A DNA stretch of 64,000 nt, from the IMG/VR virus record IMGVR_UViG_3300017991_005548, positions 186,001-250,000 of that record, one strand, 5' to 3'. Both the position numbers and the translations under genes were made by a program. Each line of letters opens with the position of its first letter. Position 1 is the stretch's first letter. Shown here one piece after another: positions 20,811 to 41,437 of the stretch. The notes below the pieces were generated by a model that saw nothing but the letters and a program-made list of their open reading frames with translations, was not told where the DNA came from and did no database searches.

Positions 20811-21092
20811 TTACTCCTCAACATTAGCAACATCTTTTTCAGATGGTGCTTGGCCATGTTCCAGATGCATTTTCATTGCATCACGTAGCTTGAATTTATC
20901 TGTATATCTAACAGTAATTACTCCACCTGGATAAATGAGGTCCCAGCAGATTTCACCATCACAATCTTTATTCCTAATCATCCCTCCAGCATCACGCCAT
21001 CTGTCGATTAGTTCTTCCATTTCTCTTCTAAAAACAAAGACATCATTCTCTCTTTGTAAAAATGGCATCGCTATTTTAATAATCTTCATCAA
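20811..21092 (-). CDS. Leader-bearing protein, 93 aa (MMKIIKIA)
   Basis: First gene after an AGG-N19-GAA motif. Confidence 0.7.
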   Translation of the reverse strand: MMKIIKIAMPFLQRENDVFVFRREMEELIDRWRDAGGMIRNKDCDGEICWDLIYPGGVITVRYTDKFKLRDAMKMHLEHGQAPSEKDVANVEE

Positions 21093-21160
21093 ATATCCCC
21101 AAATGAATTGCTTATTCTAATTTATTCTTCAATATCAACCATCTAACCTTCATTAACACA

Positions 21161-21266: not shown

Positions 21267-21842
21267 TTATTTATTCTCGCAGACATCTATTAACTCATAG
21301 ATTAAATCTTTTTGATCATCTGTGAATTTCCATCGGACATTAACATTTTTGTCTGCCCAGTCTTTTGCGCTATTACCTTTCTCTTGCCCCATACTGACCC
21401 AATCAGCCACCATTTCAGCTATGTCAATGTCCCCCATCTTAGTGCCATCAATCATTTTTTCGGGTGGTTTGTCTCTATCATTTCTGTTGATGAGATCGAC
21501 CGTTTCAGATGAATGAAACTCTGGATGATGCCTATTACTTTTTACATGATGCTCAGTAGCTTTATTCATCTTTTCATCCATCCCATCTGGCGGTTCCCAG
21601 TCTACACCATCATCTTTGCATTTATAACTCCATGTTACATAAAGATATGGTTCATACTCTGGATCTTCAAATTTACTATCGTCATGATGACTGGCCTGTT
21701 CGATAAGGTCTTCGAATTTGTCATCGTAGTCAGCAATCTTTTTGCAGTATTTCTGAACTCGCTTGATATGTTCTCTAGTTCTTTTTTCAAAGAACTCTTC
21801 TATTTCTTTCTTCTCACTTTTCGCTGTCCTGATTAATTTCAT
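21267..21842 (-). CDS. HD-like metal-binding protein (DUF5662-like) with MKLIRTAK leader
   Basis: REHIKRV, HHDDSKF, HHVKSNRHHPE, EMVADW; GGAGG SD. Confidence 0.7.
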   Translation of the reverse strand: MKLIRTAKSEKKEIEEFFEKRTREHIKRVQKYCKKIADYDDKFEDLIEQASHHDDSKFEDPEYEPYLYVTWSYKCKDDGVDWEPPDGMDEKMNKATEHHVKSNRHHPEFHSSETVDLINRNDRDKPPEKMIDGTKMGDIDIAEMVADWVSMGQEKGNSAKDWADKNVNVRWKFTDDQKDLIYELIDVCENK

Positions 21843-22690: not shown

Positions 22691-23107
22691 TTAACATTCG
22701 TATGATGTCCTCTTTTCATACTCTGGGCTTCTAGAATAGCTCGTTATAAATACATCAGGGTAATTAGCACCGAATTGATCTGCCGTAATGTCAATTATTA
22801 CCTTATTGTTTAATTCAACCCAGCAATGGTAACTCTTCATACAGTTCCCGCAAACTTTTTTGGCATCGAACCCTCTTTTATTAAGTTCTGCGCACAATTC
22901 TTCGCTCATCATTTCACAGAATGGAGGAGATAGGAATTTTCCCCCGCTAAGAATTTCGTCTAACCGTTCTCTTTTTTCATCATCGTTGTCATAATCTTCA
23001 TTAACTTCTTCAAGTAGCTCTGAAACATATTCATCCATCATTCTTTCTCTGATCTCTGAAGCGATCTCAAAAATAATCCCCATTCTTGCTACTTTAATGA
23101 TTTTCAT
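22691..23107 (-). CDS. Leader-bearing (MKIIKVAR) transglutaminase/papain-fold protein
   Basis: FCEMMS...YHCWVE...IDITADQF. Confidence 0.6.
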   Translation of the reverse strand: MKIIKVARMGIIFEIASEIRERMMDEYVSELLEEVNEDYDNDDEKRERLDEILSGGKFLSPPFCEMMSEELCAELNKRGFDAKKVCGNCMKSYHCWVELNNKVIIDITADQFGANYPDVFITSYSRSPEYEKRTSYEC

Positions 23108-23108
23108 A

Positions 23109-23390
23109 TTAACCAAGAGTATCTTGAACTCTGTCCTCTCGTAACCAAAATTCTCCACTTCCACCAACAGGTTTCAATTTATATTGTGTCCTGCCGAACA
23201 TTTTACGTTTACTAAGAACTTCAACAGGAAAGAAAACAGAAGTTGACCCTCTTCCAATTTCATAAAACTGAGCATATTTTATTTGTCCAACTTCGCTCTC
23301 ATCCAGTTCCATCTCTTCTGGCACTTTTCTTTCTGGCTCTTCCTTCTGTGGCATAGGAGGAATTACTTGAGCCGCCTTCATTATTTTCAT
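23109..23390 (-). CDS. Leader-bearing protein, 93 aa (MKIMKAAQ)
   Basis: Coupled ORF. Confidence 0.7.
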   Translation of the reverse strand: MKIMKAAQVIPPMPQKEEPERKVPEEMELDESEVGQIKYAQFYEIGRGSTSVFFPVEVLSKRKMFGRTQYKLKPVGGSGEFWLREDRVQDTLG

Positions 23391-23815
23391 TATCCATCTC
23401 CTTTTATTATCTCGAATCCATTATCTAACCAACCTGCAACTGGAACTCCTTCAACAGGAGAGATGCCCATGCCAAATTTCAAAGAGACGACATCATATCC
23501 AAGCATTCTCAAAAGAACCAAAGCTTGACTGGAAGTATGACCAACATAACAAACAAGAAGAATCTTTTTGTCTTTAGGTAATTTATCCAGGTTCTCTTTT
23601 TCTAATAAATCTAGCCAGAAAATGTTCTCTGCTCCTTCGATATGCCCTTCAGCAAAGTCTTCGGGCTTTCTTATGTCTAAGATGAAGAAGTTATCCAAGC
23701 CTTTTTCCTTCAACTCAACAGGAGTGATGTAGTTCCAAGTATCGTCTGTTTTGTCAATGAACTCTTTCAGCTTTTCCGTGAAAGTTAGATCGCATGATAT
23801 TTTTATGAGCTTCAT
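23390..23815 (-). CDS. Rhodanese-domain protein with MKLIKIS leader
   Basis: ILDIRKPEDFAEGHIEGAENI and active-site loop CYVGHTS. Confidence 0.85.
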   Translation of the reverse strand: MKLIKISCDLTFTEKLKEFIDKTDDTWNYITPVELKEKGLDNFFILDIRKPEDFAEGHIEGAENIFWLDLLEKENLDKLPKDKKILLVCYVGHTSSQALVLLRMLGYDVVSLKFGMGISPVEGVPVAGWLDNGFEIIKGDG

Positions 23816-24814: not shown

Positions 24815-25213
24815 TTAGCTGTCTTGAATTCCTTCTCTTGCTTTTTGGAGTTTGTCCATTAGCATTTGGTGTTCTTCAGGAGTAGGTTCCTCTGGAACTA
24901 TGTCTTCCATTTCGTCATGCTCAAACAAATCCCAAAGCCCTTGCCTTTTTAATTGCTCTTCTATTATAGCCGCACGGAATTTATTGCATTTACCTTCGAA
25001 ATAATCATCTACTTCAGCCAAATCAAGTGGTTGGTTTATAGCATCTTGGAAAATTTTTCTGAACCTGGCTAATACAGCTTCTGTACCTCCATCCCAATCT
25101 CCTTCCAAATCGTTTGCTTTTTTCATCCACCCAGCCTTCTTCCCCATATCAGTCCACTCTTTGCGAGTCATCTTAATCCTAGTTTTTCCACCAGCAGTTT
25201 TAACTATTTTCAT
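24815..25213 (-). CDS. Leader-bearing protein, 132 aa (MKIVKTAG...WMKKAN)
   Basis: GGAG SD; AGG-N18-GAA motif upstream. Confidence 0.75.
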   Translation of the reverse strand: MKIVKTAGGKTRIKMTRKEWTDMGKKAGWMKKANDLEGDWDGGTEAVLARFRKIFQDAINQPLDLAEVDDYFEGKCNKFRAAIIEEQLKRQGLWDLFEHDEMEDIVPEEPTPEEHQMLMDKLQKAREGIQDS

Positions 25214-25292
25214 TTTAATCTCTCCATTAAGGTCTTAATTCTAATTTATTCAAAATCTTTTCTTTTGATCCTTTAATCAGCAGTAATTGTTA

Positions 25293-25820
25293 TTAAGCCT
25301 TTGCCCAAGCCAAGCCTACCCCATTTACACCTAAAGCATTTTTACATGCTTCTATCGTTGTACCTTTAGTTATTACATTATCAACAAAATAAACATTCTT
25401 GTTGTCTAAATCCATAACGTCTGCATCATCTCTGACAATCATATTGTGCTCTTCAACCGTGTAATTAGGAAGATTTTGCTTTCTCCTTTGATGAGATGGT
25501 TCTATACTAGAAGACCGACCCAATGGATCATATATCTCAGATCCAGTTATTTTAGCAATTGCCTCGCATAAAAGCATGTTTGACCCCCTATCCCCTGATG
25601 ATGATGGAACTGGTACTAAGAGGCTATTAGATGCAACATATTTCGCCATAGTATCAGCCGCTATCTTAATGGCATCTGAATTTTTGTTCTTTATTTCGTA
25701 AGATATCTTTCTAACAAAAGCTTCTTGCTGTGATAGTTCTCTTCTTCTAGGAGAAATATATTGATAAATGGCTATATTTTTGCCATCATTTAAAAATTGA
25801 GCTTTTTTATACCAGTTCAT
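25293..25820 (-). CDS. ComF-like phosphoribosyltransferase with MNWYKKAQ leader
   Basis: LVPVPSS and PRPP-binding VYFVDNVITKGTTIEAC. Confidence 0.75.
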   Translation of the reverse strand: MNWYKKAQFLNDGKNIAIYQYISPRRRELSQQEAFVRKISYEIKNKNSDAIKIAADTMAKYVASNSLLVPVPSSSGDRGSNMLLCEAIAKITGSEIYDPLGRSSSIEPSHQRRKQNLPNYTVEEHNMIVRDDADVMDLDNKNVYFVDNVITKGTTIEACKNALGVNGVGLAWAKA

Positions 25821-25930: not shown

Positions 25931-26794
25931 TTAGCTACCAGCGGTAACTGTGACCTTGGCTACTGCGTAGGTATTGATGATTACAATACCAACTTCCTCA
26001 TAAATTACCCAACCGAGGCGGAGCTTCTTTGGATCGTCTGCTGGGAGGACGGTGATATCCTGACGAATCGGGAATGCACCAACGTACTCAGCAGGAGCGA
26101 GCAAGAAGACGGTATCGGTAGGCATCTTTGAAGATACGTGAATATCAGCAGTAAAGAGATGTCCGAACAAACCAGTTGTAAGAACTTCTTTCTGTGTTGC
26201 TTCATCATAGACAGTCTTACCAAATCCACGAATGTCAGCGTAACGAAGAGCATGCATAACAAGCTTACCTACTGTGAGGTCGTGCTGTTCGATGGTTGCG
26301 AAAGCTTGGTTCAAGGCGTTAAGGGTAAGAGCACCACCAGTTGAAACAACGGTATGTGCGGCATCAATTGCGGCGGCGATAGCGTTGAAGATGTTAAGAT
26401 CTTCTTCCTTCTGAATCGCTTCTTTAGCTTTGATCTGAGCACGGTCTACAATGTAGAATCTACGAGCTTTAATCTCACTCAAGCGAATAGTAGGATTGGT
26501 TGCAATCTCGAACGTAGGAACGAGAATTTCTTCACCTTCGGTAATACCATCAGGTACAGCGCCACGACGAGGAATAACCTGGGCGGTCTGGCGAACGTCT
26601 TTCTCGTAACGTGCATAAGCGCCCTGAGGAAGCTCATCCACCATGAGAAGTTTACGTCCAACTGCTTGATATTCCAATGCTCTACGAATTGGCTCGACCA
26701 TGGCCTGAGCCAATGCTACTCTACCTTCAGGTGTCTCAAGCGCCTGAGCGATAAGAGCTTCTCTTTCTGCATTAACAGATCTTTTATTAATCAT
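25931..26794 (-). CDS. Major capsid protein, HK97 fold, 287 aa
   Basis: E-loop/P-domain pattern (GRKLLMVDELPQG, VPTFEIATNP, GWVIYEEVG); strong GGAG SD; downstream of protease and decoration genes. Confidence 0.85.
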   Translation of the reverse strand: MINKRSVNAEREALIAQALETPEGRVALAQAMVEPIRRALEYQAVGRKLLMVDELPQGAYARYEKDVRQTAQVIPRRGAVPDGITEGEEILVPTFEIATNPTIRLSEIKARRFYIVDRAQIKAKEAIQKEEDLNIFNAIAAAIDAAHTVVSTGGALTLNALNQAFATIEQHDLTVGKLVMHALRYADIRGFGKTVYDEATQKEVLTTGLFGHLFTADIHVSSKMPTDTVFLLAPAEYVGAFPIRQDITVLPADDPKKLRLGWVIYEEVGIVIINTYAVAKVTVTAGS

Positions 26795-27675: not shown

Positions 27676-27909
27676 TTATTCTTTTAGAGACTTTCTTCTT
27701 TGCAATTCTTTTTTCATAGCATCTCTGGTTTTATCTAACTCTTCTAAGTCATATCCCCAATCGATACCATAATTTTCCTGTTCAATAATTTGATTATCAT
27801 AATAAAGCCAAGCCAACTCATTTTCTAATTCTTCTGTTGGAATTTCTTCTATTGGTTCTTTAGATATAATGTATTTATGTTCTTTGTTAGACACTCTTAT
27901 TAATTTCAT
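27676..27909 (-). CDS. Leader-bearing protein, 77 aa (MKLIRVSN)
   Basis: Coupled ORF. Confidence 0.65.
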   Translation of the reverse strand: MKLIRVSNKEHKYIISKEPIEEIPTEELENELAWLYYDNQIIEQENYGIDWGYDLEELDKTRDAMKKELQRRKSLKE

Positions 27910-28157
27910 AATTTCCCCAATATTTCATCTAATCTTGTTGAAATCTCGACATCTGATAATTGTCTGAATGGAGCCTTAAATACAGTCCCAGACGGCAATG
28001 TAACCTGCACCTTGTCTCCACCTCCCAACACCTCTCTAAACTCATGATAAGTTAATCTATTGGGCTTGGCTCTTAATCCCTTGACATATACGACATTGTT
28101 GTTTGAGTCTACCCAAACAATCGATGGAATTTTAGAAGATATCTTGATTATTTTCAT
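27906..28157 (-). CDS. Leader-bearing protein, 83 aa (MKIIKISS)
   Basis: First gene after an AGG-N19-GAA motif. Confidence 0.65.
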   Translation of the reverse strand: MKIIKISSKIPSIVWVDSNNNVVYVKGLRAKPNRLTYHEFREVLGGGDKVQVTLPSGTVFKAPFRQLSDVEISTRLDEILGKL

Positions 28158-28265: not shown

Positions 28266-31200
28266 TTAACGTTGGTCGTTGTCAATCAAGTTGTCATTTA
28301 ACAACTTGGAACCAATCGTAAACGCTCCAGCGATTTTGTCCTGGAAGCTAGGCTCCTGGGCAGGCTGTGATTGAATTACGATAGCTGGAAGACCAGTTCC
28401 AGCAGTTTTAACTTGCTGTTCAGTAGAAGCAGTTTTAACGGCCTTAACTGGGAACATAGTTTCCGCAACTGAAGCAATTTTATCAACTTCAAACTGAGCT
28501 AATGCAGTAACAACATTATCAAATGTGCTCTTATCAGAAGCAATTCTGTTGTTAGCGGCTAACCATGAAGCAGTACGAAGAGCTTCCTCTTTACGTGCTT
28601 CCTTGATTCTAGCAAGTTGTTCTTCTCTTTTCTGTTGTACCTGTTTGAGATACTTATCATTGATGCCAGGCATATCTGACTGAGTTTCCTTCTCAACGCC
28701 CATATAAGCGTTATCGATAGGTACATCAGGCTTAGGTGCGTTAACGTCGATGTTATCTGGTCCTTCCTGTCCCATAGTAGCTTTTGCTCTAGGAACGTCT
28801 GGATTTGCCATCTTTACATCGATGTTGTCAGCGCCTTCATGACCCAAAGAAGCATCGGCTCTAGGAACTCCAGCTTCAACATCACCCTCAACGGTGTCAA
28901 CTTCTTTCATCTTTTTCGCTAATGCAAGCTGTCTCTGAGCCTCTTTGAGGTTTTTCTCAGCTTCAGCAATTACAGTACCTTTAATCTCATTATTGATTGC
29001 AGGCATATCTGATTGAGTAGCTTTCTCAATTCCCATGTAGGAACTATCAACAGCTACGTCTGGCAGACCAGCAGGTGGATTAATGTTATCTGCGCCTTCA
29101 TGGCCCATGGTAGCATTAGATCTAGGAACCTGAGGTTTGGCCATAGGAACGTCAATATTATCTGCTCCTTCATTCATCATAGTTGCCTTACTACGAGGTA
29201 CTCCAGCTTCAACGTCTTTCTCAATAGTTTTGATGAGCTTAGGCTTACCTGCCAACTTAATGTTGGACTCAGCGCCAGAGCGTCTTACTCTTGAGGAATT
29301 CATTGCCAAAGCCTCTGCAAGTGCGTCGGTATCAAATGTTTCCATATCTTCTCCTTCTGGAACTTCTTCAGCTTCAAATGCAACGTCCTCTGCGATGTCC
29401 TCTTCCAAGGCTTCATCACCAGTATTTTCAACAACTTCGAGGTTGTCTCCAGTGATGGTTACAGATTCAACTGCGACTTCTTCTGGTTCTTCAATAATCT
29501 CATCAACCTCTACATCGACTGAGTCGAGTGGTTCGAGATCATCTCCGATTTCAACTTCTTCCAAGATAGCCTGAGCTTTCTTGGCTAAGTTTTCTTCTTT
29601 CTGAATGAACAATTCGTTCATTGTAGCGAGATCGTATTGGCTAAGTGCAATCTTTCCTTCTTTTGCTTCATCAGCAAAAGCTTGGACGTAAATGTTATCA
29701 GATTCTTCTTTAGCGAACTTCTTCTTAATGCAGTTGCAAATTGAAGTTGCTTGAACAACATCATGTCCTTTGCTCTTTTGATCTTCAATACATTCATCCA
29801 TTGGATCTACTTGCATTAAAGTGTCAGCCAATTTTTTCATTTGACGGACTTTGGTAAAACCAAGTCTCTTCAGTTCTTTGCATACGCATTCAGCCAATGG
29901 CTTATCTTTGCAAGGACCGAATCTAGCTACAGTGTTTCCACCATAAGTTCTAGCAATTCTTTCAACGCAGTTAGCAGTTGGGAACGTATCGGCGTTAGCC
30001 TGAGCAGTCTTCAACATTCCAACAACCTTAAGCTTAGAAGCGAACTTCCTTGCTTCTTCTTTGCATTCTGGGCAACTATTGTCAGGAGAAAGATCCCATT
30101 CAACTCTTAACAAGCCGTTTGAAGGATTCTTACTACTAACAATGAGGTTCTTCTCGAAAGAAGTTCCGCATTGTCCGCATTCGCATTTGGTGCGACCATC
30201 GCCGCTTGCGATGACATCACATTTCTTATTTCCGCAAGCTGGGCAGACATCGCCATGGGCCTCTCTGTTAGCGGCAATACGAACAATAGAATCTTTATCA
30301 ATTCTAGTTTGAGCGGCAACTGGAAGTGCTGGCATTTCTTCAGGCTCTTCAGGGCCTTCAACGTCTTCCATACCTTCTTCGCCAACGCTTTTGGTAGGTT
30401 TGATGATTCTAAATTCAATTTCTTTCTTAATGAGAGCTTCGTATTCGGCTCCGCAATTCTGGCAGTTACCGATAATTCCACCGTCATCTTCTTTAGTTAC
30501 ATCAACATCAGATGAACCACACTCTGGGCAAATGCTCCAAGGAGCTTGCTTTTCGCCAACAGTTGGGATCTCATCCTCTAACTCATCCTCATTACCAGTG
30601 GTGAGAGCTTGAAGAGCAGGATCTTCTCCCATTGGAGGAGCGTCAAGACCTTCCTCAGGAGCGCCTGGAGCGGCGACTTCGCCTGCGGCCCCTGGCATTC
30701 CGCCACCCATTGGTGACTGAGCAGTTCTTTTCATCTTCTTATTATTATAGGCAACCTGATTAAGGTTTTCCATTTCAATATCAGCGTCAAGTCCGTCCTC
30801 AATGCCTTCTCCTACGAGATCGCCTTCAGGAACGATTTCTTCTTCAATTGGTGCTACTTCTTCGCCAATCGGAATTTCAACTGACTCTTCGCCAGCATCA
30901 GTCTGGACAGCGATTTGAATGGTATTACCATCAATAGTAACATTAGTGATAGAAGCAAGCTTCATATTTTCAGTTGCTAAAGCGCCTTTAGCAAACTTAA
31001 CGATATCTTTCTTGAAAGTGGCAGAAGTCTTTTGAGAACCAAGTTCTTCGAAATCGGTTTCAATTACGATGTCTGCTCCATCAAGTTTTTCAGGATTAAG
31101 AATTTCTTCCTGAGCCTGGACTCGCTTTCTTGATTCCAAAGAAGCTAGAATTTCTTCTCTTTCAGCATCTCTTTTAGCCTTTTCGTTTTTAACGACAGCT

Positions 31201-33836
31201 TTGGTTGATGCTTCTTTAGTTTCTTTCTTCTCTTCTTTTTCTTCGCATTCTTCATCCTCTTCGTCACACTCTTCTTCTCCAGCGACAGCTTGCTTCAGAG
31301 CATTTCTAAGTTCGTCCTTAACGTTAACTTTTGCTACTGTAGAGGCTTCAGCAAGTTTTTCATCAACTTTCTTACTGATACTCTGTTCACCAAGTTCGCC
31401 ATCTGAGAGAACATCAACAGCATCAATAATAGTATCTGGATTAATAGTGTCATCAGATGCAATTACTCTCAACTTGTTAACAAGACAGTGTTCGACTTCA
31501 GTTGGGGAAGCAGTTGCAACTTTTACGTTTTTGGCGTTCCAATAGGATGATCGCTTCGAAAAAGAAGCAGATTCAGAAGATTGAGGTTCTTCTAACAAAG
31601 ATCCTGCTAATCTTACACGTTCCTTAGTGGTTGCAACGCAGTTGTTCGCAATTTCTTGCAATTCTTGTGGGGTTGCTCCAGTTTCAAGGGAAACCTCTGC
31701 AAACGCTTCAACGACAGCATCCATGTGTTCCTTAGCGGACTTAAATAGAGATGCATCTCTGTTGGCCTGACGTGCCCATGCAGGATCGACATTGTCTAAC
31801 TGCTTCTGGGTGATTACTTCAGGCTCATTGTTGGTACGATAGCCTTCACTATCCAATTGTTTTTGGGTGACAGTATGTTTGTCCTCATCCTTACGGGGAG
31901 ATACACCATTACTATCATTATCCAATTGTTTTTGGGTAATGACTTCAGGTTCGTCATCCTGTCTGGGGTTCAGCTTCAACTCGCTGTCATCCAACTGTTT
32001 CTCAGTGATAACTTCTTTTTCACCTTTTCTTGGACTCGCGTTATCATTGCTGTCCAGTTGTTTTTGTGTGATGACCTGCTGTTCTTCCCCAGTGCGACCG
32101 TGATACAACTCGGATCTGTGATCTTCGAGTTGTTTCTGAGTGATCACTTCTGGAGTTGCAAGAACGGTATTGGCACCAGCCTCTTTAGTTTCTTTACTCA
32201 TTCTTTCTACTCCTTCTCTTGGATTTGTTTTGGCGAATAAATCTAAAAATTGATGAGCCGCTACTTTTGGCGACTCACTGATTAAATTCTTATCTTGATC
32301 TGACAGATCGTCATAGGTCCAAATTTGCATTCTGTCAGAGTTAGTGTCCTCCGCGACGATGATAAATGAATCGTCTCTATTTTTCACTGCGAGTTTTAAA
32401 TTACCAATTTGCATTGATGGTACTTCTTTTATATACTCAAAAAAGCTTTGTTTTTCCTGCCACGAGTCAGATAAAACTTGCATAGCTTTTTCACGTTGTT
32501 TTTCTTTACTAGCTACGGTTCGTCTTTTTCCCATAGATTTAACTCCCGTTTTATTCATTTTATCGCACAGACTCGCGGCCTTTTGCAAAACAGAAGCTCC
32601 GAACTCATAATGATCTACGGCCTCATCTGCGACTCTCCTAATTAAATGTGAACTCTGGGCGGCTGGACGCATAGGTGCGGTAATAGGCATCTGCGGTGTA
32701 TTTACTGGAGGTTGCCCTGGCGCTCCAGTTGTCGTTCCAACTTCCATCGCTTGTTCTGAAGCAACTGGCATTGGTGCGGCATCTCTTGGAGCCGTTTCCA
32801 ATCCCCCTCCTGGTGTTGGTGGTACTTCCCCTGTTGGAGGCATACCTTCTTCTGGAGCGTTACCCTCGGTTCCAGGAACCTGAGATTCAACACTTCCATA
32901 TCCAGCCCCTACTAATTCATCTGACCAAGTTTGTAGACTAGCAATAATATCTACTAAATCACTTGCAAATTCAACTTCAACTTGTTGTCGGTTCTTAATC
33001 AAGTTAACAGCAATGTTCTCTAATGTTTCAAGAACCTGATTAATCTGATCAATTTCTTCCTGACTTGCATTTTTCTCAAGTGCCGCAGTCTTAATCATTC
33101 TAAGGTAATTCTCAACATTGGCAACTCTTGCAAGATAATCATCGTTTGGAATTATACCTTCAATATGGCAACTTGGGCAAGCAGGATCAACAACTCCACT
33201 TAACTCAATAAACTTGATCCCATAATTATGTTCAAATACTGGTTCGTCTTTGAATTCCTTCACTTCGCCAGTTCTAACGTTTCTGGCCCTACCAGTAAAT
33301 TTTCTGCTCTTTCTATTTCTAATATGTTCGCAGTAATCTTCAGTTCTCTCAGCTTTGTTTTCGCAAATACTGCAAGTACTGTATTCAACTGAAGCACCCA
33401 TGGAGACTCCAGTCATATATCCTTGTTCAATACCGCGACAAATATGAGGATAAGCATCTCTATCTACAAAAGCTATTGTATAAACAGCATTATCATCTTC
33501 GTTCCATTCGGCCCAGATGATCTTACCTTTAGCCTTTTCTATATCTTGATTTTCATGATTGGTAAAGAAAGGGACACCTTCGAAACTCTTATAAGCTTTA
33601 AGCAATTCTTCTTTCGAAAATGAATCACCATTACTATTAGGTTCGTCAGCTTTGATTGCTTTAGCCCTGAAAAATAAAGCATTTGGATGCTTTGTAATTT
33701 CTGCTTGAACAATCTTTTCTTTCTCTGAACCAGGCTCTATCAAAACTCTGCCAGAGGCAGTTTTAATCATAACCTCGTCTTCCTTAGAAATTTGCTCTAC
33801 AGGACAAGGTTCGGTTAAAGCAACTTTTATTAACAT
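28266..33836 (-). CDS. Giant prohead protease/scaffold protein, 1856 aa
   Basis: N-terminal assemblin/HK97-type protease (NGDSF, FTNHEN, GVSMG, IELSGVVDPA) with CSIC insert; then repeats, zinc ribbons and acidic tracts; lies between portal and MCP. Confidence 0.8.
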   Translation of the reverse strand: MLIKVALTEPCPVEQISKEDEVMIKTASGRVLIEPGSEKEKIVQAEITKHPNALFFRAKAIKADEPNSNGDSFSKEELLKAYKSFEGVPFFTNHENQDIEKAKGKIIWAEWNEDDNAVYTIAFVDRDAYPHICRGIEQGYMTGVSMGASVEYSTCSICENKAERTEDYCEHIRNRKSRKFTGRARNVRTGEVKEFKDEPVFEHNYGIKFIELSGVVDPACPSCHIEGIIPNDDYLARVANVENYLRMIKTAALEKNASQEEIDQINQVLETLENIAVNLIKNRQQVEVEFASDLVDIIASLQTWSDELVGAGYGSVESQVPGTEGNAPEEGMPPTGEVPPTPGGGLETAPRDAAPMPVASEQAMEVGTTTGAPGQPPVNTPQMPITAPMRPAAQSSHLIRRVADEAVDHYEFGASVLQKAASLCDKMNKTGVKSMGKRRTVASKEKQREKAMQVLSDSWQEKQSFFEYIKEVPSMQIGNLKLAVKNRDDSFIIVAEDTNSDRMQIWTYDDLSDQDKNLISESPKVAAHQFLDLFAKTNPREGVERMSKETKEAGANTVLATPEVITQKQLEDHRSELYHGRTGEEQQVITQKQLDSNDNASPRKGEKEVITEKQLDDSELKLNPRQDDEPEVITQKQLDNDSNGVSPRKDEDKHTVTQKQLDSEGYRTNNEPEVITQKQLDNVDPAWARQANRDASLFKSAKEHMDAVVEAFAEVSLETGATPQELQEIANNCVATTKERVRLAGSLLEEPQSSESASFSKRSSYWNAKNVKVATASPTEVEHCLVNKLRVIASDDTINPDTIIDAVDVLSDGELGEQSISKKVDEKLAEASTVAKVNVKDELRNALKQAVAGEEECDEEDEECEEKEEKKETKEASTKAVVKNEKAKRDAEREEILASLESRKRVQAQEEILNPEKLDGADIVIETDFEELGSQKTSATFKKDIVKFAKGALATENMKLASITNVTIDGNTIQIAVQTDAGEESVEIPIGEEVAPIEEEIVPEGDLVGEGIEDGLDADIEMENLNQVAYNNKKMKRTAQSPMGGGMPGAAGEVAAPGAPEEGLDAPPMGEDPALQALTTGNEDELEDEIPTVGEKQAPWSICPECGSSDVDVTKEDDGGIIGNCQNCGAEYEALIKKEIEFRIIKPTKSVGEEGMEDVEGPEEPEEMPALPVAAQTRIDKDSIVRIAANREAHGDVCPACGNKKCDVIASGDGRTKCECGQCGTSFEKNLIVSSKNPSNGLLRVEWDLSPDNSCPECKEEARKFASKLKVVGMLKTAQANADTFPTANCVERIARTYGGNTVARFGPCKDKPLAECVCKELKRLGFTKVRQMKKLADTLMQVDPMDECIEDQKSKGHDVVQATSICNCIKKKFAKEESDNIYVQAFADEAKEGKIALSQYDLATMNELFIQKEENLAKKAQAILEEVEIGDDLEPLDSVDVEVDEIIEEPEEVAVESVTITGDNLEVVENTGDEALEEDIAEDVAFEAEEVPEGEDMETFDTDALAEALAMNSSRVRRSGAESNIKLAGKPKLIKTIEKDVEAGVPRSKATMMNEGADNIDVPMAKPQVPRSNATMGHEGADNINPPAGLPDVAVDSSYMGIEKATQSDMPAINNEIKGTVIAEAEKNLKEAQRQLALAKKMKEVDTVEGDVEAGVPRADASLGHEGADNIDVKMANPDVPRAKATMGQEGPDNIDVNAPKPDVPIDNAYMGVEKETQSDMPGINDKYLKQVQQKREEQLARIKEARKEEALRTASWLAANNRIASDKSTFDNVVTALAQFEVDKIASVAETMFPVKAVKTASTEQQVKTAGTGLPAIVIQSQPAQEPSFQDKIAGAFTIGSKLLNDNLIDNDQR

Positions 33837-37841: not shown

Positions 37842-40070
37842 TTACTCTTTTGGTGCTTGATTTTGAATAGCCATTTCCTTTTTCATAATTGTCTGCACAA
37901 TTTTACTCATTGCCTGCTGTGGCTGTTTCTCTATCTCACTATCTTTAAACCTTAAAACAGTCCAGCCCATCTGGGCAAGTTGCCTATCTCTTTCTTGGTC
38001 TTTTTGAATCTGTTTTGGAGAATTGTGAAAAATCTCTCCATCTGCTTCAATAATAAGTCTCAAATGAGGGAGGGCAAAGTCTACAGGATGTTCCATATTT
38101 CCTATCATAATCTTATACTGAGGGATAATAGGATATTTAATAATCCCGTCTTTTTGATGTTGAACCATATGATCCATCAATTCTCTTTCAATTTTTGTAA
38201 AAGCGATTCTCCCCTTCTCATCTCTTACCTGTCCATCTTTCCCTTGCGAATAGGAAGATGGTTTTGCGGTCTCTGAACGCATTTTCTTTTGCTCAGAAAC
38301 TAATTTATCTCTGGTTTTCTTTTTCAAAACCTTTCCGCCAAATTGTGATGGATCAGCAACTTCCGCAGTCAATGGCCCTGTTTTTGCCAATACGGGTTCT
38401 CCACCTGTTGGTGCGGCTGGCGCTCCACCGAGATCTCCTCCTGGCTCAATAGGGGGTTCTCCCCCCATACCTCCCATTCCACCTCCAAGATCCATGCCTC
38501 CTGGCATTCCGCCGAAGCCACCACCCATGTCTCCTCCAGGCTGTTGCCCCATACCTTGTCCAAGGGCCATCATTTGAACGGCATCATAGCGTTTTCTTTC
38601 AATTTCTTGATCTGGGTCAATATCAAATGCTTCAAGAACAGTCTGCGCACTAACAAGACCCTTCTCGTACAATTGAATAATAAATGTTCTGTATTGCTGT
38701 TGATCTCTAAGATGCATGGAGTTCCATTTAATCTTAGGAACCAGATACTCTTCTTCTCCCGTCTCAGGATTTGTATCAATAAACCCTTGTCGTTTAGCTT
38801 CTGGGAGATATAGGAAATCTGTTATCCAATCAGCTATTTGACTTCTAAATGTGTCCAACCTGTGAATCATAGCTTCAATACCAACAGAAGCGCTTGCAAA
38901 TGTTGGACCTTCACCATTAAGAAGAGCATTGTTAATCATCATACCATCAAGGACTTCCTGATTGATGAATTCAAACTCATTACTAAGAGTAAGAACTTTG
39001 CCAGAAGCACCCACCCAGTCAAAATCAAATGCATGGTGTGTGACAATGGTAAGGTTAGGGTCATTAGCAGTTTCGGCAAGCTGTGCTTGTACAGCGGCAA
39101 TATCGGCAGGTCCAGCAGGACGTTCATCACTACCGACTTTAACAATCTTAATAGGAACGATTAGACGTTCTGCAACGATCCACTGAGCTACCATGAGCTT
39201 AGTTTTATATGAAAGTATAGGGAATAATCTACGGACCATTCCGATTCCATAACGAGTATATCCACTTTCACCATATTTCAAGTGAGAAACGTTACGATTA
39301 TCTAATCGGATAGGCTGACCTGACGAAACAAGTGCGATTACATCTGGAGAAAGTTTCTCATATCCAGGTGTTTTTCTCTGGACCATATTGATGAGTTCTT
39401 CATCTGGTTTCAAAGCGATAATCGGGTCAGGATTTAAAGGTGGGGTATAGACATCTACAAAGTCAGGGTTAAGGATGACCATTCTTCTGACCGTTCCTCC
39501 CTCATGATCGCAAATAATATCTCCGACCATTCCAGAGCCTCCACAATGCTCACAATGGATTTCTGCAAATGGGAAGCAATCGCCAAGCAAATGGACTTCA
39601 TGACTTATCAAACGACACCATTTAGTCAGTTCGAGTCTTTTTTTGAATTTATCAAAGTATAACTTAATCTCTCTATCTTTACACTCATGTTCCCAATCAC
39701 TCATTGGAAAATAACTGTAGAAATCAATTGCAGAAGCTACCTTGGGTTCGTTTTCATAGAAGAATCTTGCCCATTGATATTGTTCTATTCTTTTACTTGG
39801 GATCTGCCAGTTGATTGGAGTATGAACTGGGGAGAAAAATTGAGGCTGACCATAAATAGTTCCTGCACTTGCTACGGAACTAAATTTCGCCATACCATTT
39901 CCCCATTGGGTACTGGCACCAGTCGTTGGGGCATAGTTTTGTCTTGGGATAGGTCGATATGATTGGTGCTGTGGAACCTCGCTGGTAGCGAGTTTAGCGG
40001 GATCTCTATTTCTTAATGCTCTAAAAGTCTCTTCTAGATTGGTAGTTTGTAGGTGAACTTGCATGCACAC
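37842..40070 (-). CDS. Portal protein fused to a C-terminal DUF559/Vsr-like endonuclease-fold domain
   Basis: VASAIDFYSYFP, LNPDFVDV, LYEKGLVSAQTVLEAFDID portal-like pattern; G/M/P linker; VDFALPHLRLIIEADGEIFH...RDRQLAQMGWTVLRF. Confidence 0.75.
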   Translation of the reverse strand: MCMQVHLQTTNLEETFRALRNRDPAKLATSEVPQHQSYRPIPRQNYAPTTGASTQWGNGMAKFSSVASAGTIYGQPQFFSPVHTPINWQIPSKRIEQYQWARFFYENEPKVASAIDFYSYFPMSDWEHECKDREIKLYFDKFKKRLELTKWCRLISHEVHLLGDCFPFAEIHCEHCGGSGMVGDIICDHEGGTVRRMVILNPDFVDVYTPPLNPDPIIALKPDEELINMVQRKTPGYEKLSPDVIALVSSGQPIRLDNRNVSHLKYGESGYTRYGIGMVRRLFPILSYKTKLMVAQWIVAERLIVPIKIVKVGSDERPAGPADIAAVQAQLAETANDPNLTIVTHHAFDFDWVGASGKVLTLSNEFEFINQEVLDGMMINNALLNGEGPTFASASVGIEAMIHRLDTFRSQIADWITDFLYLPEAKRQGFIDTNPETGEEEYLVPKIKWNSMHLRDQQQYRTFIIQLYEKGLVSAQTVLEAFDIDPDQEIERKRYDAVQMMALGQGMGQQPGGDMGGGFGGMPGGMDLGGGMGGMGGEPPIEPGGDLGGAPAAPTGGEPVLAKTGPLTAEVADPSQFGGKVLKKKTRDKLVSEQKKMRSETAKPSSYSQGKDGQVRDEKGRIAFTKIERELMDHMVQHQKDGIIKYPIIPQYKIMIGNMEHPVDFALPHLRLIIEADGEIFHNSPKQIQKDQERDRQLAQMGWTVLRFKDSEIEKQPQQAMSKIVQTIMKKEMAIQNQAPKE

Positions 40071-40105: not shown

Positions 40106-41437
40106 TTAGAGTTCATCAATTTCGAATGTGTCTACCTCTTCAACCTCTTGAACATCTTGAACACCCATTTCTTCGCCAACTTCATTTAGACCAATCTCAT
40201 CTGCCGCATCCTGAATTGATTCAACTTCACCATTCTCGTCAAGTGCATCAAGGGCTTCAGTAAGATTTGAAATGTCAGTTTTGATAATGACAGTTTGACC
40301 GACCCCTTTCCCAGAAGCAATATCATAATTGCCTTGTGGAGTATTTGGGTCATCTACAAGAATTGTTCCCTGTAAAAGATTGACAGGAACATTCCCACCA
40401 TCTCCCATTGTTTCAGCCGCAAGGTCACTTAACAATCTGTAGGTTGACCTTGAATTTGCTGTTTTGACAGGTTTAACATCAAATGCATAAGCAATTTGAT
40501 CATGTTTCTTCACCATCGTATCAGCAAACTTTCCGATCTGTGCTACGTTCGTTATTGAAGTGTCGTAATGCTCAGAGATCAAATCCAACATATTCTCATA
40601 TCCGATGCCTGCCGCTTTCATATCCATGTAATCAGTAAAGATGCTATAAACAATATCATCAAACCTATTTACAGGGGTCTTACTAGCTGTTTTAACCAAT
40701 TTATTAAAAGAATTGGCAGTCGTCGTTACTTCAAGATCATAAGTCTCATTGCCTCTGGCCTCTTCCAGTCTTCTTTCAGTTGAATACTGATGAGGTCTTG
40801 GCTTTCTGGTCCTTTCATTCAGACCTAATTCCATTTGGTTTCCGCCATCTCTTGGAGCGTCTGGATTGGCAGGAGTACCAGCAGTAGGGTAAACATGGAA
40901 TCTGTCATTGATATATCCACCAACCCATTGTCCTTCTTCTGTTTTATACTCTCTGTAGAATTTGTCCATGACATACATTCTCCAGATAGCTTCCCCACTA
41001 TAAACACGATCAGGATCAGCGTCAAAAGAAATGGCATCTGGAGCATAATGAGTGAAATCAAAAAACTGATCTCTGTCAACTCTCCAAGGAGTGTCTTCAT
41101 TATAAGCATCTACTGCTCTATTCCATTTATTACGCTCTCCTCGCATCCAACCGTTTCTCTGTCTGCTTTGAGCTTTCTTTTCCATATAAACACCTTTATT
41201 TAATGCCTCTGTTAAATTGTGTTTGGACAAAATTTTATACAATACATTAGACGCATCTTCGTCATCATCATTATAGATCGCTGTACAAGCGTCTTTAATG
41301 TCCAACTCATCCTCAATAAAGTCAATGTCAGTAGTTATCTTCACTACCTTCATTAACTCGTTAAATGCATCTCCTAACGTATCTTTATCTCTAATCCAAT
41401 CATTAAGATCATTTGGATTTTTGAAAAAATTCGCCAC
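40106..41437 (-). CDS. Hypothetical protein, 443 aa (GTG start), with KKAQ/KTAS/KTAN motifs
   Basis: Long ORF adjacent to portal. Confidence 0.75.
   Translation of the reverse strand: MANFFKNPNDLNDWIRDKDTLGDAFNELMKVVKITTDIDFIEDELDIKDACTAIYNDDDEDASNVLYKILSKHNLTEALNKGVYMEKKAQSRQRNGWMRGERNKWNRAVDAYNEDTPWRVDRDQFFDFTHYAPDAISFDADPDRVYSGEAIWRMYVMDKFYREYKTEEGQWVGGYINDRFHVYPTAGTPANPDAPRDGGNQMELGLNERTRKPRPHQYSTERRLEEARGNETYDLEVTTTANSFNKLVKTASKTPVNRFDDIVYSIFTDYMDMKAAGIGYENMLDLISEHYDTSITNVAQIGKFADTMVKKHDQIAYAFDVKPVKTANSRSTYRLLSDLAAETMGDGGNVPVNLLQGTILVDDPNTPQGNYDIASGKGVGQTVIIKTDISNLTEALDALDENGEVESIQDAADEIGLNEVGEEMGVQDVQEVEEVDTFEIDEL

What the first reader, a model, noticed from the sequence alone, without database searches (positions are those of the whole stretch)
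28266..33836. Recurrent (K/R)-x-A-(S/Q/A/N/G) motif at domain junctions: predicted maturation-protease cleavage code
Seen: the protease/scaffold has many copies (IKTASG, IKTAAL, EKNASQ, QKAASL, TKEAGA, RQANR, MKLASI, KRTAQS, RIAAN, LKTAQA, KKAQA, KEAQR, RTASW, VKTAST, VKTAGT). It also occurs in 41442-42470 (KCAS, RTAS, KTAS), 40106-41437 (KKAQ, KTAS, KTAN), 45013-45687 (KTAS), 56736-58103 (KQAQ, KEAG) and 3396-6542 (KIAQ, KIAA). It sits exactly between domains in the trypsin protein (SRVAQ) and the DUF192 fusion (SRFAQ). Established: phage prohead proteases share the herpesvirus assemblin fold, and assemblins cut after Ala in (V/L)-x-A/S-type sites. Inference: this protease cuts after (K/R)-x-A, removing leaders and processing polyproteins.
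Basis: partly seen in the sequence, partly recalled or inferred. Interest (0 to 1): 0.8.

Follow-up and report, generated by a model that had tools for sequence, protein, structure and literature searches.

The report
Predicted capsid-protease cleavage motif and leader
A huge phage related to Bacillus phage G carries a short, strongly selected motif (hydrophobic-Lys/Arg-x-Ala) scattered through its giant protease-scaffold protein, in neighbouring head proteins and as a 7-residue tag at the start of about a dozen unrelated small proteins; it is most likely the cutting and recognition site of the phage's own capsid-maturation protease, so which proteins are processed, and perhaps packaged, could be read from the genome.

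Summary
[KR]-x-A-[SQANG] occurs 28 times in the 1856-aa ORF against 6.8 expected, and 103 against 42.5 over the window. K-x-A is the top i/i+2 residue pair in an unbiased scan. T4 shows no such bias (ratio 1.02), while its known L/I-x-E motif gives a similar signal in its scaffold.

The enrichment recurs in 60 of 61 orthologues. About ten sites are positionally conserved in otherwise variable sequence. Two bracket the protease fold at A27 and at A251/A257. Others lie 20-55 aa from the C-terminus, as with herpesvirus R- and M-sites.

The N-terminal domain has the T4 gp21/assemblin fold, with H94, S145 and H171 conserved. The extended motif has hydrophobic residues at P5/P4.

New here: 12-13 of 67 ORFs start with M-K-[IL]-[IV]-[KR]-x-[AS] or MNWYKKA, against about 0.01 expected. 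They use varied synonymous codons and have unrelated bodies, which recalls the T4 capsid-targeting sequence.

Cultivated phage G and Gordonia phage Stormageddon share the synteny and the motif.

Cleavage itself is untested, and "at domain junctions" holds for only some sites. Verdict: a new variant of a known kind, a prohead-protease code with K/R-x-A specificity plus a mini-leader. Interest is moderate to high.

The parts
28266..33836 (-). 1856-aa protease-scaffold polyprotein carrying 28 [KR]-x-A-[SQANG] sites
   Evidence: ORF; phrog_18299 head maturation protease on aa 63-220; 28 vs 6.75 expected; lies between portal and MCP, as in phage G and Gordonia phage Stormageddon
33756..33836 (-). 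N-terminal 27 aa predicted propeptide: leader-like MLIKVA, then VMIKTA27|S28
   Evidence: pLDDT<50 for aa 1-28; the A27 site is present in 54/61 orthologues, with P3 K/R 95% and P1 A 96%
33147..33752 (-). Assemblin/T4 gp21-fold serine protease domain (aa 29-230) with H94, S145, H171 and a conserved Cys cluster (C155, C158, C169, C220, C223)
   Evidence: AF2 core pLDDT 85-96; Foldseek top hits T4 gp21 5jbl, then HSV-2 and HCMV proteases; invariant and near-invariant residues
33063..33098 (-). Predicted release (R-like) sites MIKTA251|A and EKNA257|S just after the protease fold
   Evidence: low-confidence break at aa 242-256 between helices; K255 >=90% conserved; site present in 46/61 orthologues; equivalent sites in phage G gp19 (aa 248, 274) and Stormageddon gp13 (aa 217, 230)
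31779..32150 (-). Seven (E)VITQKQL(D) repeats in the scaffold part (aa 563-686); not part of the motif but part of the same protein
   Evidence: the repeat consensus is conserved over orthologues
31512..31523 (-). Conserved site KVA774|T
   Evidence: 54/61 orthologues; loop between helices in the AF2 model
30717..30728 (-). Best-conserved site RTA1039|Q
   Evidence: 60/61 orthologues, with P1 A 98% and P1' Q 98%; lies in a long disordered Gly/Pro/Met-rich segment
30000..30011 (-). Conserved site (GML)KTA1278|Q
   Evidence: 50/61 orthologues; at the end of a predicted helix
29247..29258 (-). Conserved site KLA1529|G
   Evidence: 39/61 orthologues; disordered region
28326..28436 (-). C-terminal cluster of sites KTA1803|S, KTA1812|G and KIA1836|G (M-like), 20-55 aa from the end
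   Evidence: aa 1798-1829 disordered; Stormageddon gp13 has QKTA|GT about 40 aa from its end
28269..28325 (-). Conserved C-terminal tail (aa 1838-1856), candidate capsid-protein-binding end that M-like cleavage would release
   Evidence: conservation pattern at the C-terminus; the function is inferred by analogy with herpesvirus scaffold (PMC4498786)
42111..42158 (-). Tandem sites VVERTA|SSEQMVKTA|S in the 342-aa protein 41442-42470
   Evidence: 7 vs 1.09 expected in this protein; vKTA[SQ] conserved in 8/9 orthologues that are only 32-41% identical
40682..40702 (-). Site KLVKTA|S (aa 246-252) in the 443-aa protein 40106-41437
   Evidence: conserved in 9/9 orthologues; K-x-A-Q at aa 87 in 8/9
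45619..45639 (-). Site VMVKTA|S (aa 17-23) after a conserved ~17-aa N-terminus in the acidic protein 45013-45687
   Evidence: conserved in 8/8 orthologues of 27-32% identity
46485..46502 (-). LSRFA|Q between the DUF192 domain (aa 5-104) and the C-terminal domain
   Evidence: Pfam DUF192; [KR]-x-A-Q at this junction in 5/6 orthologues, followed by a variable linker
51556..51573 (-). ISRVA|Q, 20-30 aa upstream of the trypsin-like domain (aa 160-336) of 50917-51978
   Evidence: no orthologues could be fetched
9646..9666 (-). N-terminal leader MRLIRTA of 8656-9666
19350..19370 (-). N-terminal leader MKIIKNA of 17613-19370
20787..20807 (-). N-terminal leader MKLVRKA of 20400-20807
21069..21089 (-). 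N-terminal leader MKIIKIA of 20811-21089
21822..21842 (-). N-terminal leader MKLIRTA of the DUF5662 protein (true start at the Met with GGAGG upstream)
   Evidence: 87/120 homologues start with M-x-[WI]-[YI]-[KR]-x-[AS]
23087..23107 (-). N-terminal leader MKIIKVA of 22691-23107
23370..23390 (-). N-terminal leader MKIMKAA of 23109-23390
23795..23815 (-). N-terminal leader MKLIKIS of the rhodanese-like protein 23390-23815
25193..25213 (-). N-terminal leader MKIVKTA of 24815-25213
25800..25820 (-). Variant N-terminal leader MNWYKKA of 25293-25820
   Evidence: the MNWYKKA and MKIYKLA types alternate at the same position within one protein family
27889..27909 (-). N-terminal leader MKLIRVS of 27676-27909
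28137..28157 (-). N-terminal leader MKIIKIS of 27906-28157
49939..49959 (-). N-terminal leader MKIIKVS of 47575-49959, which also has an internal NNWYKEA|Q at aa 232-239
25931..26794 (-). HK97-fold major capsid protein with no full motif
   Evidence: NCBIfam NF042927, E 5.6e-59; Pfam Phage_capsid; in 60 unique orthologues the full motif is 5 vs 67.5 expected while [KR]-x-A alone is 249 vs 234 (the sequences are related, so this is weak evidence)
37842..40070 (-). Portal protein, marking the head module
   Evidence: phrog_16240 portal, E 1.6e-47

Best explanation
ORF 28266-33836 is a protease-scaffold polyprotein of a huge phage of the phage-G lineage. Its N-terminal ~200-aa domain is an assemblin/T4-gp21-fold serine protease (His94-Ser145-His171).

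The recurrent motif, refined here to [LIM]-[VI]-[KR]-x-A followed by S/G/Q (P5-P1'), is the recognition site of this protease, and the bond cut is most likely the one after Ala.

Inferred sequence of events inside the prohead:
- The protease frees itself by cutting at A27 and at A251/A257.
- It detaches the scaffold from the shell by cutting 20-55 aa from the C-terminus.
- It chops the 1600-aa scaffold at some two dozen sites into pieces small enough to leave.
- It trims accessory head proteins: 40106-41437, 41442-42470, 45013-45687, the DUF192 fusion and probably the trypsin-domain protein.

The same motif forms a 7-residue N-terminal leader (MKIIKxA or MNWYKKA) on about a dozen unrelated small proteins. 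By analogy with the T4 capsid-targeting sequence, this leader probably marks them as substrates, and possibly as cargo of the prohead, and is then removed.

Shown: the motif, its enrichment, its conservation, its placement and the protease fold. Inferred: that cutting occurs, where the bond is cut, and that leaders target proteins to the capsid.
For: (1) Enrichment is 4.1-fold in the polyprotein and 5.1-fold in three neighbouring head-module proteins. KxA is the top pair in an unbiased scan.
(2) Controls: T4 gives a ratio of 1.02 for this motif. T4's real gp21 motif [LI]-x-E gives 2.8-fold in scaffold gp22 and 2.7-fold in gp21, the same kind and size of signal.
(3) The enrichment recurs in 60/61 orthologues down to ~40% identity. 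In the scaffold part, [KR]-x-A is the most conserved i/i+2 pair class over 50 distant orthologues (0.26 vs 0.094; 11/41 sites kept in >=50% of them). Sites at A27, A257, A774, A1039, A1278 and A1529 are islands in variable sequence.
(4) The sites bracket the protease fold at disordered boundaries. The same arrangement is seen in phage G gp19 and Stormageddon gp13.
(5) Fold: T4 gp21 is the top hit, then herpesvirus proteases. H94 and S145 are invariant and H171 is >=90% conserved. Inteins in orthologues sit next to the Ser motif.
(6) The fixed residues are at P3 and P1, the same spacing as T4 L/I-x-E, SPN3US A-x-E (PMC10052503) and herpesvirus VQA-S / YLQA-T (PMC4498786).
(7) Leaders: 12-13 of 67 ORFs vs 0.006-0.02 expected, encoded with varied synonymous codons. 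The proteins are unrelated beyond the leader, apart from one trio. Leaders are present in distant relatives, mostly within the head module.
(8) In phage G the head region shows 2.5-fold enrichment and a distant region 1.2-fold. Phage G is reported to have no trypsin-like protease (PMC12484599), so the prohead protease is the shared candidate enzyme.
Against: There is no direct evidence of cleavage: no proteomics for this phage, and the phage G virion mass-spectrometry paper (Gonzalez 2020) was not readable here.

Sites are not preferentially in predicted disordered segments (7/19 vs 46.5% of residues), and some, such as A1756, lie in confident helices.

P1' differs between internal sites (S/G/Q) and the leaders of the DUF5662 family (K/E/S).

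A 1.8-2.4-fold enrichment also appears in enzymes and other ORFs of the window, so either many proteins are substrates or part of the signal has another cause.

A 7-residue propeptide is shorter than known T4 capsid-targeting sequences (10-20 aa; PMC5694885).
Confidence: 0.6

Rival explanations
1. The motif is a docking motif only. It would be a short linear peptide that binds a head component (the substrate groove of an inactive protease, the capsid protein or the portal) to recruit scaffold and cargo, without being cut.
For: N-terminal leaders on unrelated proteins behave like a tag. P1' is loosely constrained in leaders. Many internal copies lie in helices.
Against: Docking alone does not explain ~28 copies spread along the scaffold, conserved sites on both flanks of the protease fold and near the C-terminus, or the P3-x-P1 layout shared with known assemblin-fold protease sites. 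The T4 precedent combines docking and cutting in one sequence. This reading is not exclusive of the main explanation.
Confidence: 0.15
2. The sites are cut by another protease, either the phage trypsin-like enzyme (50917-51978), cutting after the Lys/Arg, or a host protease, as host Prp cuts staphylococcal phage 80alpha head proteins.
For: A fixed basic residue would suit a trypsin-like S1 pocket. The window encodes a Trypsin_2 domain protein. Short N-terminal leaders on head proteins cut by a host enzyme are known from 80alpha (own knowledge).
Against: The strictly conserved Ala two residues after the basic residue is not a trypsin-type determinant. The motif is shared with phage G, for which a published inventory lists no trypsin-like protease, and with Gordonia phage Stormageddon, whose host is unrelated. 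The component common to all three is the G-type prohead protease.
Confidence: 0.07
3. The N-terminal heptapeptide serves something unrelated to proteolysis, such as translation initiation efficiency, N-terminal stability or a regulatory interaction, and merely resembles the internal motif.
For: MK-rich, A/T-rich starts are common in highly expressed genes. No experimental data link the leaders to the capsid.
Against: Synonymous codons vary. The MNWYKKA variant is not A/T-rich, yet keeps K at position 5 and A at position 7. The same hydrophobic-hydrophobic-K-x-A appears internally at conserved sites and in apparent fusions (NNWYKEAQ at aa 232 of 47575-49959). T4 and a distant phage G region have none.
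Confidence: 0.1
4. The motif is a composition or secondary-structure artefact: helix-favouring K..A patterns in a Lys/Ala/Glu-rich scaffold.
For: Scaffold proteins are helical and low in complexity. Some sites are in helices.
Against: Shuffles preserve composition. KxxA and KxxxA are not enriched, whereas KxA is. T4 proteins give a ratio of 1.02. Positions are conserved while the flanks vary.
Confidence: 0.03

Closest known systems
Herpesvirus assemblin / pUL26 protease-scaffold precursor (R-site and M-site)
   Same: An N-terminal Ser-His-His protease of the same fold is fused to a scaffold. Self-release occurs at a site just after the protease domain, and a second site near the scaffold C-terminus frees it from the capsid protein. 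Ala is at P1 and a selective residue at P3 (PrV YLQA-T and VQA-S; PMC4498786). Fold match.
   Different: P3 is Lys/Arg instead of Val/Leu/Gln. There are about 28 sites rather than two to four. The scaffold is about five times longer, with Zn-ribbon-like and repeat modules. No sequence similarity is detectable; the host is a bacterium.
Phage T4 gp21 prohead protease with (L/I)-x-E sites and the capsid-targeting sequence (CTS) of internal proteins
   Same: It is the best structural match (5jbl). The motif has the same P3-x-P1 architecture. The scaffold is enriched in sites about 2.8-fold. Short N-terminal leaders that end in the cleavage motif sit on otherwise unrelated packaged proteins (PMC5694885). 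Small leader-bearing genes lie within the head-gene cluster.
   Different: P1 is Ala, not Glu, and P3 is basic. The leader is 7 aa rather than 10-20. Protease and scaffold are one polypeptide. Targeting by the leader is untested here.
Giant-phage prohead proteases phiKZ gp175 and SPN3US gp245 (A/S/G-x-E)
   Same: These are giant phages in which one protease processes many head and ejection proteins at a simple tripeptide motif, with multiple motif copies in propeptides (PMC10052503).
   Different: The specificity is different. The propeptides there are mostly >100 aa, and the protease is not fused to the scaffold.
Bacillus phage G gp19 and Gordonia phage Stormageddon gp13 ('capsid maturation protease')
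   Same: They are true homologues of the protease domain (33-42% identity). The gene order is the same: portal, large protein, protease(-scaffold), decoration-like protein, HK97-fold capsid protein. The same K/R-x-A enrichment and flanking sites are present. Phage G has MKRLIKK[AS] leaders.
   Different: Phage G's protease is a separate 300-aa protein. No cleavage motif for these proteases was found in the literature that could be searched.
Staphylococcal phage 80alpha scaffold and capsid leaders cut by host Prp
   Same: A short N-terminal leader shared by several head proteins is removed by a site-specific protease (own knowledge).
   Different: There the enzyme is a host cysteine protease and the motif mimics ribosomal protein L27. 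Here the motif also fills the phage's own protease-scaffold and is shared across phages of unrelated hosts.

Membership tests
Assemblin / T4 gp21-fold prohead serine proteases | Characteristic fold | tested here: met
   AF2 model of aa 1-300 (core pLDDT 85-96). Foldseek PDB hits 1-2 are T4 gp21 5jbl (prob 1.00, TM 0.56 on target); hits 3-11 are HSV-2 and HCMV proteases.
Assemblin / T4 gp21-fold prohead serine proteases | Conserved His-Ser-His catalytic residues | tested here: met
   H94 and S145 are invariant and H171 is >=90% conserved in 35 orthologues. That they form a triad in space was not measured.
Assemblin / T4 gp21-fold prohead serine proteases | Match to a curated sequence family (Pfam Peptidase_S77/S78/U35 or equivalent) | tested here: not met
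   No Pfam protease family at E<=0.01 and no PDB sequence hit. There are only the PHROG matches phrog_18299 'head maturation protease' (E 1e-18) and phrog_2774, and a sub-threshold NCBIfam hit. It is a divergent lineage, recognisable by fold and by phage homologues.
Assemblin / T4 gp21-fold prohead serine proteases | Proteolytic activity and self-processing | not testable with these tools
   Needs expression of aa 1-300, wild type and S145A.
Protease-scaffold fusion of a tailed-phage head module | Gene lies between portal and major capsid protein, with homologous modules in characterised phages | tested here: met
   Portal 37842-40070 and MCP 25931-26794. Same order in phage G and Stormageddon.
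Protease-scaffold fusion of a tailed-phage head module | Scaffolding function of the C-terminal 1600 aa | not testable with these tools
   Only indirect evidence: a long, partly helical and disordered, repeat-rich region with a conserved C-terminal tail. In three relatives the protease and the rest are separate ORFs.
Prohead-protease cleavage motif | Motif over-represented in scaffold/core proteins relative to composition, and not in an unrelated phage | tested here: met
Prohead-protease cleavage motif | Sites conserved in position while the surrounding sequence varies | tested here: met
Prohead-protease cleavage motif | Sites in accessible linkers or at domain boundaries | tested here: inconclusive
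   True for the protease flanks, A774, A1039, A1529, A1803/A1812, and the DUF192 and trypsin proteins. Overall only 7/19 are in low-pLDDT segments vs 46.5% of residues.
Prohead-protease cleavage motif | Observed neo-N-termini after the motif in mature virions | not testable with these tools
   No proteomic data were available.
Capsid-targeting-sequence-like leader (T4 CTS type) | Short N-terminal peptide shared by otherwise unrelated proteins and ending in the protease motif | tested here: met
   12-13 ORFs vs ~0.01 expected. Bodies are unrelated except for one trio. The leader ends in [KR]-x-[AS]. It is present in distant relatives.
Capsid-targeting-sequence-like leader (T4 CTS type) | Leader is necessary and sufficient for incorporation into proheads and is removed there | not testable with these tools
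   Needs a leader-reporter fusion during infection by a cultivable relative such as phage G.

The most novel reading that the evidence does not exclude
The heptapeptide M-K-I-I-K-x-A (variants MNWYKKA; MKRLIKKA in phage G) is a genome-readable address label. It would bind the substrate groove of the protease domain that is built into the scaffold polyprotein, so that the protease itself acts as the cargo receptor. Dozens of small proteins and enzymes per genome (rhodanese-like, DUF5662, nucleotidyltransferase-like and others) would thereby be loaded into the capsid, trimmed by seven residues, and injected with the DNA. The full set of injected proteins of phage-G-like huge phages could then be listed from sequence alone.
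Probability: 0.3. Interest if true: 0.8.

Novelty: new variant of a known kind. Interest (0 to 1): 0.6.

Why it matters
Huge phages of 300-550 kb are known almost only from metagenomes, and most of their genes have no assigned function. If this motif is the protease's code, sequence alone would give three things for this widespread clade (170 related capsid-gene loci in IMG/VR):
- the maturation pathway of a very large capsid;
- the boundaries of the mature pieces of a 1856-aa polyprotein;
- a candidate list of processed, and possibly packaged and injected, proteins.

The same motif and leader occur in cultivated Bacillus phage G and in actinophages such as Gordonia phage Stormageddon, so the prediction can be tested directly at the bench.

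It would also add a basic-P3/Ala-P1 specificity to the assemblin-fold proteases. This sits between the herpesvirus type (Ala at P1) and the T4/phiKZ type (Glu at P1).

Tried and rejected
- Single-protein locus searches with 41442-42470 and with the trypsin-domain protein found only the window's own contigs. Orthologues of the former were reached by anchoring on the portal instead. The trypsin-protein site could not be checked for conservation.
- A sequence search of the protease domain against PDB gave nothing meaningful. The fold search was needed.
- The phage G virion mass-spectrometry paper (Gonzalez 2020) is not held. The 2025 phage G paper has no held supplements and used fully tryptic searches. 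Published mature N-termini therefore could not be checked.
- Literature searches for the leader strings and for a K-x-A prohead-protease motif found nothing relevant.
- The idea that sites concentrate in disordered linkers was tested on the AF2 model of aa 660-1856 and is not supported as a general rule.
- A co-variation test using locus L080, the one orthologue without enrichment, was uninformative. That ORF holds an intein and a shorter scaffold, with separate downstream ORFs.
- The idea that some DUF5662 homologues lack the leader, which would make it an add-on, was weakened. One apparent exception has an in-frame upstream MKIYKMA, so its start codon was miscalled.
- A possible promoter motif (GAATAAATTAGAAT) upstream of two leader genes is not significant (5 matches vs 2.4 expected).
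- PHROGs and Pfam give no function for most leader-bearing proteins.
Full report
WHAT THE WINDOW IS

Nearly all genes are on the minus strand. The window is identical to part of IMG/VR contig 3300017991_005548 (296 kb). It is nearly identical to the 476-kb contig 3300018080_008436.

The head module reads, in the direction of transcription:
- AAA ATPase, 42853-44877;
- two unknown proteins, 41442-42470 and 40106-41437;
- portal, 37842-40070 (phrog_16240, E 1.6e-47);
- a 1305-aa unknown protein;
- the 1856-aa ORF 28266-33836;
- two small genes;
- a 173-aa gene in the position of the decoration protein;
- an HK97-fold major capsid protein, 25931-26794 (NCBIfam NF042927, E 5.6e-59; Pfam Phage_capsid).

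Bacillus phage G (portal gp14 ... protease gp19 ... decoration gp26, capsid gp27) and Gordonia phage Stormageddon (portal gp11, gp12, a 1089-aa 'capsid maturation protease' gp13, gp14, capsid gp15) have the same order. Their proteases are the best tblastn matches to the N-terminus of the ORF, at 33-42% identity. A scan with the capsid protein found 170 related loci in IMG/VR, several on contigs of 300-550 kb.

THE PROTEASE

Residues 63-220 match phrog_18299, 'head maturation protease'. No Pfam family and no PDB sequence matches.

An AlphaFold2 model of aa 1-300, built on 35 orthologues, has a confident core at aa 30-230. Residues 1-28 and 242-256 have low confidence. Foldseek ranks T4 gp21 (5jbl) first, followed by the HSV-2 and HCMV proteases.

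H94 and S145 (in GVSMG) are invariant, and H171 is at least 90% conserved. Five invariant cysteines suggest a metal site. In many orthologues a LAGLIDADG intein interrupts the domain next to the serine motif.

IS THE MOTIF REAL?

Composition-preserving shuffles give the following:
- 28 observed vs 6.75 expected for [KR]-x-A-[SQANG] in the ORF;
- 7 vs 1.09 in 41442-42470;
- 103 vs 42.5 over the 67 ORFs;
- 17 vs 2.2 for [KR]-T-A-[SQANG].

Without any prior motif, KxA is the most over-represented i/i+2 pair in the window (139 vs 89.9). AS is the top adjacent pair and RxA is also high. KxxA and KxxxA are not enriched.

In 50 kb of phage T4 the same motif is at expectation (37 vs 36.1). T4's experimentally known gp21 motif [LI]-x-E is 2.8-fold enriched in the scaffold gp22 and 2.7-fold in gp21. 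The signal here therefore has the kind and size that a real prohead-protease motif produces.

CONSERVATION

Sixty-one orthologues of the polyprotein were extracted; their protease domains are 40-100% identical to the window's. Sixty of them show 2- to 5-fold enrichment, and KxA is the top pair in most of those tested individually.

In their alignment, sites recur at fixed columns:
- A27, 54/61;
- A257, 46/61;
- A774, 54/61;
- A1039, 60/61, with P1' Gln in 98%;
- A1278, 50/61;
- A1529, 39/61;
- A1756, 40/61;
- A1836, 25/61.

These are islands in otherwise unconserved sequence. Over the scaffold part and 50 distant orthologues, [KR]-x-A is the best-conserved of all i/i+2 residue-class pairs: mean 0.26 vs 0.094, with 11 of 41 sites kept in at least half of the orthologues, against 6.6% for all pairs.

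Pooling 546 distinct instances at the conserved columns gives the extended motif:
- P5: L/I/M;
- P4: V/I;
- P3: K (87%) or R;
- P2: T/V/I;
- P1: A (93%);
- P1': S/G/Q.

Orthologues of the neighbouring proteins, only 27-60% identical, keep the sites as well:
- vvKTAS near residue 20 of the 45013 family, 8/8;
- vKTA[SQ] at residue 117 of the 41442 family, 8/9;
- K-[TVIL]-A-S at residue 249 of the 40106 family, 9/9;
- [KR]-x-A-Q directly after the DUF192 domain, 5/6.

PLACEMENT

A27|S28 sits at the boundary between the disordered N-terminal 28 residues and the protease fold. A251 and A257 sit in the low-confidence break after the first C-terminal helix. Phage G gp19 has LVKTA|A at aa 43 and KVA|S / KIA|S at aa 248/274. 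Stormageddon gp13 has KQA|A and KSA|S at aa 217/230.

Near the C-terminus there are KTA1803|S, KTA1812|G and KIA1836|G, ahead of a conserved tail. Stormageddon has QKTA|GT about 40 residues from its end.

This mirrors the herpesvirus pUL26 precursor. There an R-site releases the protease, and an M-site removes the C-terminal capsid-binding tail (37 residues in pseudorabies virus); both sites have Ala at P1 (PMC4498786). The fixed P3 and P1 positions are also the layout of T4 L/I-x-E and SPN3US A-x-E (PMC10052503).

The general claim that sites lie 'exactly between domains' does not hold. In the AF2 model of aa 660-1856, 7 of 19 strict sites fall in segments with pLDDT<50, which make up 46.5% of residues. 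A1756, among others, lies in a confident helix. T4's helical scaffold is nevertheless degraded at many sites, so this does not exclude cutting (own knowledge).

Twelve to thirteen of the 67 ORFs begin with M-[KR]-[ILVM]-[ILVM]-[KR]-x-[AS], for example MKIIKNA, MKLIRTA and MKIVKTA. The expectation is 0.006-0.02.

Three of these starts are internal Met codons of the longest ORF; one of these three (21267) has a clear Shine-Dalgarno-like sequence upstream. The residues are encoded by varied synonymous codons, so selection acts on the protein.

Apart from a trio that shares a 28-residue module, the proteins are unrelated beyond the leader. They include a rhodanese-like protein, a DUF5662 protein and a 794-aa protein with a weak nucleotidyltransferase match.

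Among 120 DUF5662 homologues from metagenomes, 87 start with M-x-[WI]-[YI]-[KR]-x-[AS]. The MNWYKKA type and the MKIYKLA type alternate at the same position. One apparently leaderless homologue has an in-frame upstream MKIYKMA.

The window has both types: MNWYKKAQ at 25293-25820, and an internal NNWYKEAQ in 47575-49959.

Distant relatives carry MKI[IL][KR]TA-x-Y leaders on small genes placed just upstream of the protease gene or downstream of the capsid gene. Phage G has MKRLIKK[AS] on gp13, gp17 and gp38. T4 and a distant region of phage G have none.

The polyprotein itself starts with a leader-like sequence in 32/61 orthologues. Capsid-protein N-termini read M-A-hydrophobic-x-K-x-[A/S/G] in many relatives.

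The closest precedent is the T4 capsid-targeting sequence, a 10-20-residue N-terminal peptide that ends in the gp21 motif (PMC5694885).

WHERE THE MOTIF IS ENRICHED AND WHERE IT IS NOT

Within the window:
- polyprotein, 4.1-fold;
- 40106 + 41442 + 45013, 5.1-fold;
- capsid, decoration-like, 1305-aa protein and portal together, 0.56-fold (not significant);
- Pfam-annotated enzymes, 1.8-fold;
- other ORFs, 2.4-fold.

In 60 unique capsid-protein orthologues the full motif occurs 5 times against 67.5 expected, while [KR]-x-A without the P1' condition is at expectation (249 vs 234). This is consistent with avoidance, but it is weak because the sequences are related.

In phage G the head-gene region shows 43 vs 17.3, and a region at 447-497 kb shows 21 vs 17.3.

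WHICH ENZYME?

The window encodes a trypsin-domain protein. The motif, however, is shared with phage G, for which a published inventory lists no trypsin-like protease (PMC12484599), and with an actinophage. The component common to all three is the G-type prohead protease. An invariant Ala two residues after the basic residue is not a trypsin-type determinant.

CONCLUSION

The most likely explanation (about 0.6) is a cleavage and recognition code of the phage's own assemblin-fold protease. The protease would release itself, detach and fragment the scaffold, trim accessory head proteins, and remove a 7-residue leader from a set of small proteins that are probably prohead cargo.

Cutting, the scissile bond and targeting are inferred. 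No description of this motif or leader was found in the searchable literature, but the key phage G proteomics paper could not be read.

It is a new variant of a known kind of system. It can be tested in cultivable phage G.

Noticed in passing
L059:2302-4401 and L080:369-2768 (and about 25 other orthologues in L016-L064): Many orthologues of the polyprotein carry a ~390-aa LAGLIDADG/Hint intein inserted in the protease domain, right after the catalytic Ser motif. The window's copy has none.
   Followed up: partly
window 58172-61675 (-): A B12-dependent (class II) ribonucleotide reductase is interrupted by an intein with a LAGLIDADG domain (aa ~360-680).
   Followed up: no
window 37887-38096 (-), portal aa 659-728: The portal ORF ends in a DUF559 / REase_MTES_1575 endonuclease-like domain (Pfam E 5.6e-13). 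This is either an unusual fusion or a mobile endonuclease gene read through from the portal.
   Followed up: no
window 31779-32150 (-); also 53105-54046 (-) aa ~34-42: Seven copies of (E)VITQKQL(D) lie in the scaffold and are conserved across the clade as iTEkQL. A single EEITDKQLD occurs near the N-terminus of another protein. This is a second short linear motif of unknown role, possibly capsid-protein binding.
   Followed up: partly
window 28707-29219 (-): Five degenerate repeats of GVPR-x-x-A-T-M-G-x-E-G-A-D-N-I-D-V lie in the C-terminal third of the scaffold. The region is predicted disordered, and the repeats are conserved as P-x-VP...MG-x-E.
   Followed up: no
window ~31354 (aa ~828 of the polyprotein); L001:5400-5660: The near-identical 476-kb contig has an indel in the acidic Glu/Cys run that splits the polyprotein ORF into 833-aa and 957-aa pieces. 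It is either an assembly error or a real variant in a low-complexity stretch.
   Followed up: partly
window 33147-33752 (-): Five invariant cysteines (C155, C158, C169, C220, C223) in the protease domain suggest a structural metal site. T4 gp21 is not known to have one (own knowledge).
   Followed up: no
window 17613-19370, 20400-20807, 24815-25213 (-): Three proteins share, after the leader, a 28-aa module G-K-x-x-[VI]-x-[LM]-[ST]-x-K-[ED]-W-x-x-x-G-K-K-A-G-W. The module also occurs in an unrelated metagenomic phage contig (L100:3085-4485).
   Followed up: partly
window 1730-2818 (-): An actin-like protein of the Volactin family (Pfam PF25216, E 3e-63) is encoded in this huge phage.
   Followed up: no
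window 21114-21127 and 25238-25251 (-): The exact 14-mer GAATAAATTAGAAT occurs upstream of two leader-bearing genes, and a 2-mismatch copy lies upstream of the trypsin-domain gene. It may be a promoter element, but it is not statistically significant.
   Followed up: partly
P0038 (homologue of window 21267-21842): A DUF5662 homologue with 63% identity is deposited as a protein of a 'Candidatus Paceibacterota' metagenome-assembled genome. This may be a mis-binned phage contig or a hint about the host.
   Followed up: no
L051, L053, L073 (about 1.7-9.2 kb): In three relatives the protease (470-632 aa) and the scaffold (1662-1796 aa) are separate adjacent ORFs. The break falls in the Pro/Gly-rich linker that corresponds to aa ~300-400 of the window protein.
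   Followed up: partly
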